Below are positions 18,933 to 25,014 of a stretch of DNA of 64,000 nt, piece by piece. How positions within the stretch are numbered: the first letter of the stretch is position 1; every line of letters starts with the position of its first letter. A program made the translations under genes and the position numbers. This DNA is from Ylistrum balloti (taxonomy: Eukaryota). Location: positions 496,001 through 560,000 of the forward strand of contig NW_026781958.1 of assembly GCF_031769215.1 (NCBI RefSeq), given 5' to 3'. The notes under the pieces were generated by a model. That model was not told where the DNA came from. It saw only the letters and a program-made list of their open reading frames with translations, and made no database searches.

Positions 18933-19790
18933 CGTGTACATCTCTGGACGTACATGGTGATATAAAACCAATCGACCGTAGCTTGTGTACTGTACATCTC
19001 TGGACGTACATGGTGATATAAAACCATTCGACCGTAGCTTGTGTACTGTACATCTCTGGACGTACATGGTGATATAAAACCATCCGACCGTAGCTTGTGT
19101 ACTGTACATCTCTGGACGTACATGGTGATGTAAATCCATTCGACCGTAGCTTGTGTACTGTACATCTCTGGACGTACATGGTGATGTAAAACCATTCGAC
19201 CGTAGCTTGTGTACTGTACATCTCTGGACGTACATGGTGATGTAAAACCATCCGACCGTAGCTTGTGTACTGTACATCTCTGGACGTACATGTTGATATA
19301 AAACCATTCGACCGTAGCTTGTGTACTGTACATCTCTGGACGTACATGGTGATATAAAACCATTCGACCGTAGCTTGTGTACTGTACATCTCTGGACGTA
19401 CATGGTGATATAAAACCATCCGACCGTAGCTTGTGTACTGTACATCTCTGGACGTACATGTTGATATAAAACCATTCGACCGTAGCTTGTGTACTGTACA
19501 TCTCTGGACGTACATGGTGATATAAAACCATCCGACCGTAGCTTGTGTACTGTATATCACTGGACGTACATGGTGATCTAAAACCATCCGACCATAGCTT
19601 GTGTACTGTACATCTCTGGACGTACAGGTTGATATAAAACCATTCGACCGTAGCTTGTGTACTGTACATCTCTGGACGTACAGGTTGATATAAAACCATT
19701 CGACCGTAGCTTGTGTACTGTACATCACTGGACGCACATGGTGATATAAAACCATTCGACCGTAACTTGTGTGCGGTATATCTCTGGATG
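18933..19790. repeat. 56-bp minisatellite, ~15 copies
   Basis: TATAAAACC recurs at 18961, 19017, 19073; unit CGTACATGGTGATATAAAACCATTCGACCGTAGCTTGTGTACTGTACATCTCTGGA. Confidence 0.97.
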
Positions 19791-20469
19791 ACCTGTTGAT
19801 CTGAGACCATTATTTAGCTATGCACATGACATAAATTCATACGAGATTCATCGGATACTTCTGTTCTAAGTTGATAGAGAAAGGTCTTTCTTCAGTCACA
19901 GCATCTCGGTGAAATTTCCGGTTATCTTCGGGAAATTAGAATTCCGAAAATTGTCGAACATTTCGCCGAGATGTTTTAAATTTTCCTATATTTAGTGTAC
20001 ATTTCTGTTGAAATAGCTTTTTCGTTCCTCATGTCGTTCCAGAGTCAAAGGAAATCCGCTGCTCCGCAATCGCAGAAATATTGCTTCGATCATACCCCCT
20101 CCCCCATTCCCCTCCCCCGATCCTTACGAAGACATGTGTTGGCAATCTAAGCCGTTTAAGTCTATCTGAATAGGACATTTCCTTAAGTCAAGGTAATTGT
20201 TGAGTTTTCATCCGTTGCACAGCTTCAAGCATATCAATATGTACTAAGCTATTGTCTTGTACAGTAACGAAAAGTTGTAGATATTTAAAAAAAAAGAAGA
20301 AGGAAAGTTCGTCTCACAGTGCAAACAGAATTTGTTTCTTAGCTTACGTACTTTACGTTCATCAAAAGAAGAGGTTGGTCTAATAACTACTCCCCTGTTG
20401 TCATTGTCTACTTCTTGCAATTTTGTTTTTTTTGCTATTAATTCTTTCATCGTTATTGCTTCCAATACA

Positions 20470-23320
20470 CATTAACTAACATAGTTGTGGAAGGAATTTC
20501 GGTAGCCATTTGGCAATCCAAGCTACCAGATCTTGGAGTATATTTACATCAGCACTTCCATGGATACATCTAAATAATGCCGTGTCGTCTGCAGAAGGGT
20601 AAGCCTCAGACTGTATTGTATCAAGTGGGTAATCTATATATATGACGAAGAATGTTAGTCCGAGTAACGATCTCTGGGGAGCTACCGAGTGTACACCGCT
20701 TTAGTTGGAAAGGTGCGATCCCTGGGGAACTAAGGAGGGTACACCGCTCCAGTCGGAAAGGTGCGATCCCCGAGGAACTACGAGGGTACACCGCTCCAGT
20801 CGGAAAGGTGCAATCCCTGGGGAACTACGAGGGTACACCGCTCCAGTCGGAAAGGTGCGATCCCTGGGGAGCTACCGAGTGTACACCGCTCCAGTCGGAA
20901 AGGAGCGGTCCCTGGAGAACTACAAGGGTACACCGCTCCAGTCAGAAAGGTGCGATCCCTGGGGAACTACCGATGGTACACCGCTCCAGTCGGAAAGGAG
21001 CGATCCCTGGGGAGCTACCGAGTGTACACCGCTCCAGTCGGAAAGGAGCGATCCATGGGGAACTACGAGGGTACACCGCTCCAGTCGGAAAGGTGCGATC
21101 CCTGGGGAACTACGAGGGTACACCGCTCCAGTCGGAAAGGTGCGATCACTGGGAACTACCGAGTGTACACCGCTCCAGTCGGAAAGGAGCGATCCCTGGG
21201 GAACTACCGAGGGTACACCACTCCAGTCAGAAAGGTGCGATCCCTGGGGAACTACGAGGGTACACCGCTCCAGTCGGAAAGGTGCAATCCCTGGGGAACT
21301 AAGGAGGGTACACCACTCCAGTCAGAAAGGTGCGATCCTTGGGAACTACCGAGTGTACACCGCTTTAGTCGGAAAGGTGCGATCCCGGGGGAACTACCGA
21401 GGGTTCACCACTCCAGTCAGAAAGGTGTGATCCCTGAGGAGCTACCGAGTGTACACCGCTCCAGTCGGAAAGGTGCAATCTCTGGGGAACTAAAGAGGGT
21501 ACACTGCTCCAGTCAGAAAGGTGCGATCCCTGGGAACTACCGAGTGTACACCGCTTTAGTCGGAAAGGTGCGATCCCTGGGGAACTAAGGAGGGTACACC
21601 GCTCTAGTCGGAAAGTTGCGATCCTTGGGAACTACCGAAGGTTCACCACTCCAATCGGAAAGGTGTGATCATTGGGGAGCTACCGAGTGTACACCGCTCC
21701 AGTCAGAAAGGTGCAATCCATTGGGAACTACGAGGGTACACCGCTCCAGTCGGAAAGGTGCAATCCCTTGGGAACTACGAGGGTACACAGCTCCAGTCGG
21801 AAAGGTGCGATCCCTGGGGAACTACCGAGGGTACACCGCTCCAGTCGGAAAGGTGCAATCTCTGGGGAACTAAGGAGGGTACACTGCTCCAGTCGGACAG
21901 GTGCGATCACTGGGGAACTACCGAGTGTACACCGCTCCAGTCGGAAAGGTGCGATCCCAGGGGAACTACCGAGGGTACACCGCTCCAGTCGGAAAAGTAG
22001 GATCCCTGGGGAACTACCGAGGGTACACCGCTCCAGTCGGAAAGGTGCGATCCCTGGGGAACTACCGATGGTGCACCGCTCCAGTCGGAAAGGTGCATTC
22101 CTGGGGAATTACCGAGGGTACACCGCACCAGTCGGAAAGGTGCGATCCCTGGGGAGCTACCGAGGGTACACCGCTCCAGTCGGAAAGGTGCGATCCCTGG
22201 GGAACTGAGGAGGGTGACCAGCTCCAGTCGTAAAGGTACGATCCCTGGGAACTACCGAGTGTACACCGCTCCAGTCGGAAAGGTGCAATCTCTGGGGAAC
22301 TACCGAGTGTACACCGCTCCAGTCAGAAAGGTGCAATCTCTGAGGAACTACCGAGGATGCACAGCTCCAGTCGGAAAGGTGCATTCCTGGGGAATTACCG
22401 AGGGTACACCGCTCCAGTCGGAAAAGTAGGATCCCTGGGGAACTACCGATGGTGCACCGCTCCAGTCGGAAAGGTGCGATCCCTGGGGAACTACCGAGGG
22501 TACACCGCTTCAGTCGGAAAGGTGCGATCCCTGGGGAACTGAGGAGGGTGACCAGCTCCAGTCGTAAAGGTACGATCCCTGGGAACTACCGAGTGTACAC
22601 CGCTCCAGTCAGAAAGGTGCAATCTCTGAGGAACTACCGAGGATGCACAGCTCCAGTCGGAAAGGTGCGATCCCTGGGGAACTACCGAGTGTACACCACT
22701 CCAGTCAGAATGGTATGGAAAGGTTCCTCATGTCGTTTTACTTAAAATGCTGTTGTATCGGACTTTATCGAACGCTTTCTGGAAATCCATATATATATAT
22801 ATATATCGATGTAACGACAATTGCACAGTTTCAAAGGTTGTAAGGAAGTAGATTTGACAGAATAGGCTGTCGTAGTGTTTCCTCTCTCTGCTAGACTTCG
22901 CTTCGAAAACACAACGTATGCAGTGGAGAAAAGCGGTAATAAGACCGGTCATTTCGTCTGTTGAGTCGACCTACCAGACATACATTTTTACTTTTTTTAA
23001 GAATGTTGCTATTGGGGTCTTCCATAGTCCCATACGAGTTGTGCCCTTGGACGAATAACATCATCATCGGAATTGGGATAAACAGAGTAAACGGTGTTTT
23101 AAATACCACTGTTTTCATTTCTTCTAACCGGAACCAATATCATTGTGTATCCCTGAATATGGATTCCATGGAAGTCAATGCTCAAAAGTCTTTTTCCACA
23201 ATCAAAGCCTCGGATTTCTTATTTGAGAGTGCTTGTTTTGCGACCTGTCAATCAAGTACAAGACTGAGATGGTGGCGGTTTTGTTGTGATTTATATGAAA
23301 TGACAATATCCTGGAGGTAG
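20470..23320 (-). mobile_element. Degraded CR1/L2-type LINE reverse-transcriptase fragment interrupted by a minisatellite
   Basis: Minus-strand motifs in RT order: WKTPIATFLKK (~23000), YMDFQKAFDKV (22762-22793), SDWSGVxSVVPQGS (array), then PQRSLLGLTFFVIYID...SADDTALFRCI...LQDL...WLPKF (20678-20470; ADDT at 20581-20592). Confidence 0.85.
20672..22708. repeat. 47/48-bp GC-rich minisatellite, ~43 copies, derived from LINE RT coding sequence
   Basis: Unit GAACTACCGAGGGTACACCGCTCCAGTCGGAAAGGTGCGATCCCTGGG; its reverse complement encodes PQGSHLSDWSGVPSVV. Confidence 0.97.
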
Positions 23321-23853: not shown

Positions 23854-25014
23854 TACTCAACAAAAACAGAAACGAACAATTAAATCATGCAATCAGTAGC
23901 CTTTGATAATTTGTGCAAAATTCAATATGAAGGGACAAATCTACTCTTTGCAATACTGTAGAAGAATAGTCTGTGTGACGTCACTCGTGTCGTCAGTAGT
24001 TACTGGGTTAACCGCGAAAAAACAAAATGAAACTGCAGTACCTGGTGTGGGCACCTCTTGCACCAATCTCTGCACGGATTATCTTATGCATTGAATTCAC
24101 GAGAACATTAAATCACCTTAAGGGAATGTTGTTTCATTGTTATGTTAATGCTATGACAAACTGGGCGCGGTTAGTTGGGTGTTTTGACGTTTCCTAATAC
24201 GCCTGTCCAGCTCATCCCACAGATGCTCAATAAGAGACGACGGGGCTATATGGGTGCCATTCCAGAGGCTGAACGTCGCCTGCCGTGAAAAATTCACGAC
24301 AGACTCTGGCAACAAGGACATGTGGTTGGAGAATCTGGTCTCTGTATCGAACGGCATTGCGGTTTGGATCCAGGACCATTAAGGGGGATTTTACTCCTTG
24401 GGAGATGCCTCCTGAAACCATTACAAAAGCCCCACCGAATCTATCACGATCAACCACGCATGCGTCAGCGAAAAGTTCACGGCGTCTACGATATACCCTT
24501 TTTCTTTCGTCTGCGCGATACAGACTGAATCTAGACTCGTCGGTGAACATCACACGCCTTCACCGATACACCCTGAACCTATTCGGGCCATGTCTGCGCA
24601 TCCAGTCAAGACGCACTTGTAGCCGCCATGGTGTCAGAGGTGGTCCGACATAAGGTAGGCGCGTAATGATTCCCTCGGCACGCAAAGTTGTGGCAGTTGG
24701 AGCACTAATGGGTCTGCCAAGAGTACCTGAGGTATGCAACGCAGTCTCTACAGCAGTCTTGGATTTGTTGCGCAAGTGTTACAATCGAACCGCCCTGTCG
24801 TGCGGTCGTTACACGCGGACGACCGCTCCTGGGACGATCGGAAACTTACCCAGTAGCATGGAAACGGGACAACGCCGACCTGCCGTGTTACAGGGTAGAT
24901 TGTCGAGAGAGGAGATCATTCTTGATGTAATACCTGACCAAATATTCCATTATTTTCTAACAGCTAACTTGTACTGCAATGGAGAGCTTTGTGCGTTTCT
25001 ATTTTTGTTGAGCA
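23854..25014 (-). mobile_element. Tc1-family DNA transposon, defective, with both TIRs
   Basis: Left end TA|TACTCAACAAAAACAGAAACG, right end CGTTTCTATTTTTGTTGAGCA|TA. Minus-strand transposase remnants: GRPISAPT..., FTDESRF, GGAFVMVSGGIS, WHPYSP, IEHLWDELDRRIR, with frameshifts. Confidence 0.88.

What the first reader, a model, noticed from the sequence alone, without database searches (positions are those of the whole stretch)
20470..23320. A 2-kb minisatellite born from the SGVPQGS motif of a LINE reverse transcriptase
The 47/48-bp unit translates on the minus strand as (L)SDWSGVPSVVPQGSH, the conserved CR1/L2 RT segment SDWxxVxSGVPQGSVLGP. The flanks continue the RT in the expected order: YMDFQKAFDKV just upstream (22762-22793) and PQRSLLGLTFFVIYID...ADDT...LQDL just downstream. 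So about 43 copies of one RT motif were amplified in place within a dead LINE, leaving its origin readable. A deletion of roughly 25 codons lies right at the array's upstream edge, hinting that one repair or slippage event caused both (inference).
Basis: partly seen in the sequence, partly recalled or inferred. Interest (0 to 1): 0.7.

Follow-up and report, generated by a model that had tools for sequence, protein, structure and literature searches.

The report
Minisatellite grown from dead LINE gene
A 2-kb tandem repeat in this scallop genome is 43 copies of a 16-codon piece of the reverse-transcriptase gene of a decayed jumping element, multiplied where it lay; it is a clean but ordinary example of a known way that repeats arise.

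Summary
Window 20668-22714 is a 43-unit array: 27 units of 48 bp and 16 of 47 bp, about 86% matching. On the minus strand the unit reads (H)LSDWSGVPSVVPQGS.

Both flanks align collinearly with reverse-transcriptase (RT) open frames of related non-LTR elements in the same genome:
- upstream, IYMDFQKAFDKV (RT motif A);
- downstream, the end of motif B, then ADD (motif C), then the C-terminal part down to about 19954.

The unit consensus is 80-83% identical at DNA level to the relatives' codons for SDWSEVSSGVPQGS, at the expected position. A 48-mer search with up to 3 mismatches over the 648.5-Mb assembly finds the unit only in this array. So the array is not a dispersed satellite, and other copies of the element do not carry it. 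Contigs from four other sequencing runs (two studies) contain the downstream junction; two of them also show the upstream one.

About 22 codons are missing just upstream of the array. Whether the deletion and the array share one cause is untested. One odd lead is a 15-nt exact copy of a downstream LINE segment lying at the deletion junction.

The CR1/L2 clade was not tested; the evidence reaches only an APE-type, jockey-like LINE.

This scan already noted several RT-derived minisatellites on other DNA of this genome. I met one more, in L028. Verdict: reading supported, a known kind of event, low interest.

The parts
20668..22714 (-). Minisatellite of 43 units (47 or 48 bp). Each unit is a copy of the RT motif-B codons SDWSxVxSGVPQGS plus a 2-codon joint (H-L).
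   Evidence: The unit consensus is 80-83% identical to the relatives' RT DNA at the matching position. The unit is unique to this locus in the genome.
22737..22811 (-). Upstream flank: RT motif A region, reading HRYIYIYMDFQKAFDKVRYNSILSK. An (AT)n microsatellite runs into its 5' part.
   Evidence: tblastn: L074 aa 51-75 and L072 aa 44-63 at 52-65% identity. DNA identity to L072/L074 is 77-79% over 62 nt.
22820..22855 (-). Possible further upstream RT remnant (KSTSLQPLKLCN against the relatives' RSMSLQLLKVLD), in another frame. Weak.
   Evidence: E 1.6 only. It is collinear with, and correctly spaced from, the motif A block.
22710..22735 (-). 26-nt junction patch standing where relatives have 92 nt, so about 22 codons are lost. 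It overlaps the 15-nt repeat copy (22723-22737), the 8-mer ACCTTTCC that equals the unit start (22717-22724), and the first 5 nt of unit 1.
20479..20700 (-). Downstream flank, an open 74-codon piece: the last unit runs on into ...PQRSLLGLTFFVIYID (end of motif B), SADDT (motif C, ADD at 20584-20592) and ILQDLVAWIAKW.
   Evidence: 148 matches in the genome, many inside long RT open frames; 70-75% DNA identity over 87-121 nt, starting inside the last unit.
19954..20478 (-). Rest of the decayed LINE open frame, with stops and frameshifts, including LKEMSYSDRLKRLRLPT (20032-20187) and the TT*G (TTRG) C-terminal motif.
   Evidence: tblastn of L073 aa 8-277 to 20682-19954, E 5e-35. DNA alignment.
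20024..20038 (-). Downstream copy of the 15-nt exact direct repeat. It is native here, coding the LINE's TTRG motif.

Best explanation
An old, 5'-truncated or heavily decayed non-LTR retrotransposon lies on the minus strand from about 22855 (perhaps 22960) down to at least 19954. It is an APE-type LINE, jockey/CR1/L2-like.

Inside it, a 47-48-bp stretch coding the RT motif-B segment SDWSxVxSGVPQGS was duplicated in tandem. It then expanded at the DNA level to 43 units, by replication slippage and/or unequal exchange or gene conversion, including multi-unit block duplications.

Shown: the array is non-coding, since units of 47 and 48 bp are mixed and every frame has stops.
Inferred: it is drifting neutrally, with shared unit variants.
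Suggested only: it probably varies in length among individuals.
Inferred: it does nothing for the element or the host.

Shown: its origin from the local RT sequence, and its confinement to this one locus. Inferred: the mechanism of the first duplication and of later growth.
For: - The array and its units are.
- Relatives in the same genome are true LINE RTs. L071 has a 1049-aa open frame with Exo_endo_phos_2, Exo_endo_phos and RVT_1 (E 3e-34). L072, L073 and L075 carry RVT_1.
- Both flanks are collinear with these RTs.
- At DNA level the upstream flank, first unit, last unit and downstream flank map to relative positions 18-79, 172-212 and 193-312 in order.
- The 48-mer with up to 3 mismatches gives 14 hits in 648.5 Mb, all in this array. 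The reversed-pattern control gives 0. BLAST with 293 bp of the array finds only the array.
- Blocks of units recur: u02=u08, u04=u11, u03~u10, u05~u12, u07~u13, u36=u39, u31=u34. This fits multi-unit exchange.
- In all four runs (two studies) contigs cross the downstream flank-array junction. In two runs the loose ends of contigs read the upstream junction. Contigs of two runs show an extra 94-bp (two-unit) block at the array's end.
- Tandem arrays are very common here: 15 arrays cover 21% of the window.
- A relative of the same LINE (L028) carries another array made from its own open-frame codons.
Against: - Pfam does not recognise the short flank pieces by themselves, so the RT identity of the flanks rests on relatives from the same genome.
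- No orthologous pre-expansion allele was seen, so 'in place' is inferred from collinearity and uniqueness, not watched.
- The short direct repeat expected by slippage-birth models is weak: only CCGACT at the unit start against CGGACT in the 3' flank, about 47 nt apart.
- The single-stranded unit has no unusual fold that would favour slippage (z 0.13).
- The exact copy number of 43 depends on the assembly.
Confidence: 0.9

Rival explanations
1. A single complex repair or template-switch event produced three things together: the roughly 22-codon deletion, the junction patch and the first duplication. This refines the best explanation rather than replacing it.
For: - The deletion abuts the first unit.
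- The junction patch holds a 15-nt exact copy of a LINE segment 2.7 kb downstream, which was about 0.7 kb away before the expansion.
- That copy is the only exact match of 10 nt or more between the two flanks, and only 1 of 2000 shuffles reached 15 nt.
- The downstream copy is native there, coding the TTRG motif.
- The patch also holds ACCTTTCC, the start of the unit, just before unit 1.
Against: - The upstream 15-mer can also be aligned to the relatives' native codons, 8 of 12 matches after a 3-nt gap, so it may be native and the identity chance.
- This was a post-hoc observation.
- This LINE copy has many other indels.
- Adjacency alone is weak evidence in a copy this decayed.
Confidence: 0.18
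2. The array is a copy of an independent, dispersed satellite that inserted into or recombined with a LINE. The resemblance to the RT motif would then be coincidence.
For: The genome is full of minisatellites (and earlier notes of this scan).
Against: - The unit is found only here.
- The unit is 80-83% identical to the relatives' RT DNA, in register with both flanks, and the last unit runs straight on into the RT.
Confidence: 0.02
3. The internal tandem repeat belongs to a LINE subfamily and was retrotransposed together with the element.
For: Some mobile elements of bivalves carry internal tandem repeats, for example the tandem-repeat-containing MITE reported in a clam (PMC3879986, seen as title and abstract only).
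Against: - No second locus holds the unit.
- The closest relatives (L072, L074, L075, L015, L039) have a single copy of the segment.
Confidence: 0.03
4. The array, or its size, is an assembly artefact.
For: Repeat arrays are often mis-sized in assemblies. No read-level check of the 43 units was possible.
Against: - Independent runs from two studies hold the flank-array junction, and the unit words reach a summed depth several to many times that of the flank.
- The units carry a structured pattern of variants.
Confidence: 0.03

Closest known systems
TE-derived minisatellites (Ahmed & Liang 2012, PMC3389668; Alu-derived minisatellites of Jurka & Gentles, as cited there)
   Same: A tandem array whose unit is an internal piece of a transposable element, still embedded in that element, and grown by local duplication of units. 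In human, 23% of minisatellites and satellites are reported as TE-derived.
   Different: The host is a scallop, the source is a LINE RT coding motif (motif B) rather than an Alu or L1 untranslated part, and the array is rather long at 43 units. The paper's two birth signatures are at best weakly present here: flanking direct repeats of 5-20 bp, and an incomplete terminal unit.
Other RT-derived minisatellites noted by this scan in the same genome (s1-258779, s1-258930, s1-262854, s1-254267), and L028 seen here
   Same: Arrays sitting inside decayed retroelement RT genes and made of the element's own codons. In L028 a 32-bp x 15 array reads LTGFKEM, the LINE's QLSGFKEL segment, and runs in register into the LINE.
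   Different: They use different units and different RT segments. The earlier notes were not re-tested here.
Dispersed satellite DNAs linked to mobile elements in bivalves (e.g. PMC5139131, PMC3879986; titles and abstracts only)
   Same: A link between tandem repeats and mobile elements in bivalve genomes.
   Different: Those are multi-locus families spread by or with elements. This unit is single-locus.
APE-type non-LTR retrotransposons of the Jockey superfamily (CR1, CR1-Zenon, L2 and L2-2 in bivalves; PMC10294476)
   Same: The parent element has RT motifs A, B and C in order, plus the C-terminal SYxERLxxLxLPTLxxRR and TRG motifs. A more distant relative (L071) has APE plus RT in one open frame. 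The nearest named Atlas clusters are 'jockey-like' RVT_1 proteins.
   Different: The clade was not determined. The copy is broken, lacks the endonuclease part, and has no recognisable 3' tail.

Membership tests
TE-derived, single-locus minisatellite | The repeat unit is homologous to an internal segment of a transposable element. | tested here: met
   The unit consensus is 80-83% identical over 41 nt to the RT DNA of L072, L074 and L075. At peptide level, SDWSGVPSVVPQGS stands against SDWSEVSSGVPQGS.
TE-derived, single-locus minisatellite | The array is embedded in the parent element, with both flanks collinear to it. | tested here: met
TE-derived, single-locus minisatellite | The unit is absent from other loci. 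| tested here: met
   14 of 14 hits lie in the array and the control gives 0. Limit: one assembly, and the DNA search skips very common words.
TE-derived, single-locus minisatellite | A birth signature: flanking short direct repeats or an incomplete terminal unit (models cited in PMC3389668). | tested here: inconclusive
   Only a 5-of-6 match (CCGACT against CGGACT), about 47 nt apart at the 3' edge, and an ACCTTTCC fragment at the 5' edge.
Non-LTR retrotransposon (LINE) reverse transcriptase | RT motifs A (DFxKAFD), B (PQGS) and C (ADD) in order. | tested here: met
   Relatives score RVT_1 at E 3e-34 to 2e-14. The window's own short pieces fail Pfam by themselves.
Non-LTR retrotransposon (LINE) reverse transcriptase | An APE endonuclease domain upstream of the RT. 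| tested here: not met
   No endonuclease homology was found upstream of 22855, so the copy is truncated or decayed. It is present in the relative L071.
CR1 / L2 clade specifically | Placement within the clade by RT phylogeny or by a match to curated consensus sequences (Repbase, Dfam). | not testable with these tools
   No reference LINE library was on hand. There are only automatic 'jockey-like' names.
Dispersed satellite DNA family | Arrays or monomers at many loci. | tested here: not met

The most novel reading that the evidence does not exclude
One template-switching repair event inside the dead LINE deleted about 22-31 codons. It patched the break with a 15-nt copy of the element's own C-terminal codons and seeded the first tandem duplication. 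The locus would then preserve the scar of a minisatellite's birth.
Probability: 0.15. Interest if true: 0.4.

Novelty: new member of a known kind. Interest (0 to 1): 0.18.

Why it matters
This is a tidy, fully readable case of a minisatellite made from a transposon's coding sequence. The parent motif, both junctions and the internal block structure are all visible.

On its own it adds little. TE-derived minisatellites are well documented, and this scallop genome produces arrays from many kinds of local sequence. Its value is as one data point for a genome-wide census of how and where minisatellites are born in bivalves. If the 15-nt junction copy is not chance, the locus would also be a rare one that keeps the scar of the founding event.

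Tried and rejected
- **Pfam on flank and array pieces.** Seven pieces gave nothing meaningful because they are too short and decayed. I used relatives from the same genome instead.
- **DNA search with the flanks.** The best relative is only 68% identical, so this copy is old and no close sister copy exists to serve as a pre-expansion reference.
- **First three fetched relatives, L038-L040.** They had few or no long open frames. Better ones came from the protein search.
- **Target-site-duplication reading of the 15-nt direct repeat.** Rejected, because LINE homology continues collinearly past the downstream copy to 19954. That model would also need an insertion supplying exactly the part missing from a deleted host LINE.
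- **Hairpin-driven slippage.** Three units folded as DNA give z 0.13, so there is no support.
- **The 56-bp array at 18935-19788 as part of the LINE 3' end.** No similarity to any relative locus, so this stays open.
- **Pfam on the Tc1-like remnant.** Only a weak HTH_Tnp_Tc3_2 hit.
- **Tool limits.** The large protein searches were not used, because the claim does not rest on them.

Full report
**The array.** Tandem Repeats Finder reports an array at window 20668-22714 with period 48, 43.0 copies, 86% matches and 1% indels. Splitting at a fixed anchor gives 43 units, 27 of 48 bp and 16 of 47 bp. The 47-bp forms come from at least three different one-base losses.

On the minus strand the consensus unit reads H-L-S-D-W-S-G-V-P-S-V-V-P-Q-G-S. 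Because 47- and 48-bp units are mixed, no frame stays open. The longest stop-free stretch is 142 codons and has no Pfam match.

**The flanks are RT.** The short flank pieces are not recognised by Pfam on their own. I therefore searched the window's own assembly (648.5 Mb, 1372 contigs).

The 74-codon downstream piece (20479-20700, minus strand) has 148 matches, many inside long open frames. Fetched examples are true LINE genes:
- L071 has a 1049-aa frame with Exo_endo_phos_2, Exo_endo_phos and RVT_1 (E 3e-34).
- L072, L073 and L075 carry RVT_1.

tblastn of these frames against the window is collinear:
- L074 aa 51-75 maps to 22811-22737 (motif A, IYMDFQKAFDKV).
- L074 aa 96-178 maps to 20802-20506.
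- L073 aa 8-277 maps to 20682-19954 (E 5e-35).

This covers the end of motif B, ADD (motif C) and the C-terminal SYSDRLKRLRLPT and TTRG motifs. The naming of motifs A, B and C rests on general knowledge of reverse transcriptases.

**The unit sits at the right place.** The DNA comparison is.
- The upstream flank matches the relatives' segment positions 18-79 (77-79% identity).
- The first unit and the unit consensus match positions 172-212 (78-83%).
- The second half of the last unit plus the downstream flank match positions 193-312 (70-75%).

The array therefore stands exactly where one copy of the segment belongs, and its last unit continues into the RT without a break. Between positions 79 and 172 the relatives have 92 nt where the window has 26 nt. 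The relatives do not share this loss.

**The unit is unique to this locus.** The 48-mer consensus with up to 3 mismatches occurs 14 times in the assembly, all within the array. The reversed control gives 0. A 293-bp BLAST finds only the array. This rules out an independent dispersed satellite and a LINE subfamily that carries the repeat. The limits are that only one assembly was searched and that the DNA search skips very common words.

**Growth pattern.**
- Units differ from the consensus by 3.7 of 48 positions on average, and from each other by about 6.3.
- Variant units recur in blocks: u02=u08, u03~u10, u04=u11, u05~u12, u07~u13. Further on, u25~u29, u31=u34 and u36=u39. This points to multi-unit duplications by unequal exchange or conversion, on top of single-unit changes.
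- Variants cluster by region. For example, a one-base loss at column 29 and a T at column 1 are found mostly in the 3' third.
- CpG transitions make up 29 of 160 variant cells.
- Three units folded as single-stranded DNA show no unusual structure (z 0.13).

**Other individuals.** Five runs from two studies hold about half the sampled words of the downstream junction region. I laid the contigs of four of them on 19800-20860.
- In all four, contigs cross from the flank into the array, with 1-2% differences.
- In two runs, loose ends read the upstream junction, including the 15-nt segment described below.
- In two runs, contigs show a 'goes back 94' joint, meaning two extra units near the array's end.
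- Summed unit-word depth relative to flank depth ranges from about 9 to about 75.

The tool warns that this depth is not a copy number. I take it only as a hint of length variation.

**The deletion junction.** The 26-nt patch contains a 15-nt exact copy (22723-22737) of a segment at 20024-20038.
- It is the only exact match of 10 nt or more between the two non-array flanks.
- A match that long arose in 1 of 2000 shuffles.
- It is the best local match of the junction anywhere in the window on either strand.

The downstream copy is native: it codes the TTRG motif and aligns to L073. A target-site-duplication reading fails, because LINE homology runs on past that copy.

The upstream copy might be a templated patch from a repair event, which would tie the deletion to the array's birth. 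It can also be aligned, less well, to the relatives' native codons. I leave it unexplained and give the single-event idea about 0.15-0.2.

**Context.** The window holds 15 tandem arrays covering 13.6 kb, or 21%. In 202 kb of other LINE-bearing loci from this genome, arrays cover 3.9%.

One of those loci, L028, has a 32-bp x 15 array. Its unit reads LTGFKEM, the LINE's QLSGFKEL codons, and it runs in register into the LINE.

Earlier notes of this scan list further RT-derived minisatellites on other DNA of the same genome: s1-258779, s1-258930, s1-262854 and s1-254267. They also list many arrays seeded on other local sequences. One note names the species as the scallop Ylistrum balloti; I did not verify this. 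In human, 23% of minisatellites and satellites are reported to be TE-derived (PMC3389668). Bivalves host many LINE clades, including CR1, CR1-Zenon, L2 and L2-2 (PMC10294476).

**Clade.** The clade of this element was not determined. The only pointer is that the nearest named Atlas clusters for relative L073 are 'jockey-like' RVT_1 proteins.

**Verdict.** This is an in-place, single-locus minisatellite made from the motif-B codons of a dead LINE reverse transcriptase. It is a new member of a known kind and of low general interest. One small open point remains: the 15-nt junction copy.

Noticed in passing
L028:1042-1532 (G000:C723, about 819966-820456): A 32-bp x 15.3 array whose unit reads LTGFKEM, the LINE's QLSGFKEL codons. 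It runs in register into LINE C-terminal homology at 1502-1726. This is a second minisatellite made from open-frame codons, in a relative of the same LINE.
   Followed up: partly
L072:4179-4642 (G000:C948): A 49-bp x 9.5 array begins exactly where LINE homology stops, after ...LKLPTLAFRRI. The LINE open frame reads on through it as a repetitive peptide. The unit does not look LINE-derived.
   Followed up: partly
window 18935-19788: A 56-bp x 15 array (95% matches) lies about 165 bp downstream of the last detectable LINE homology (19954). It has no similarity to the 3' regions of the fetched relatives, so its link to the LINE 3' end is unknown.
   Followed up: partly
window 22723-22737 and 20024-20038: A 15-nt exact direct repeat. 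One copy is at the deletion junction next to the array, the other in the LINE's C-terminal TTRG codons. Only 1 of 2000 shuffles reached this length.
   Followed up: partly
window 1-64000: The window is unusually dense in minisatellites: 15 arrays with periods 19-180 bp, 13.6 kb in all (21%). In 202 kb of other loci of the same genome, arrays cover 3.9%.
   Followed up: partly
window 24154-24778, minus strand: Stop-free pieces resembling a Tc1/mariner transposase (by memory: ...RVYRRRRELFADACVV..., ...IEHLWDELDRR...). Pfam gives only HTH_Tnp_Tc3_2 at E 0.0046, below its cut-off. Probably a decayed DNA transposon next to the LINE.
   Followed up: partly
window 20241-20242: Contigs of other individuals carry 10-32 extra letters here, and one run lacks 13 nt at 20096. 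These are indel polymorphisms inside the dead LINE.
   Followed up: no
L015:2140-2290 (G000:C224): A 28-bp x 5.5 array starts within 6 bp of the 5' end of LINE homology in another copy. Arrays often sit at break points of LINE fragments in this genome.
   Followed up: no
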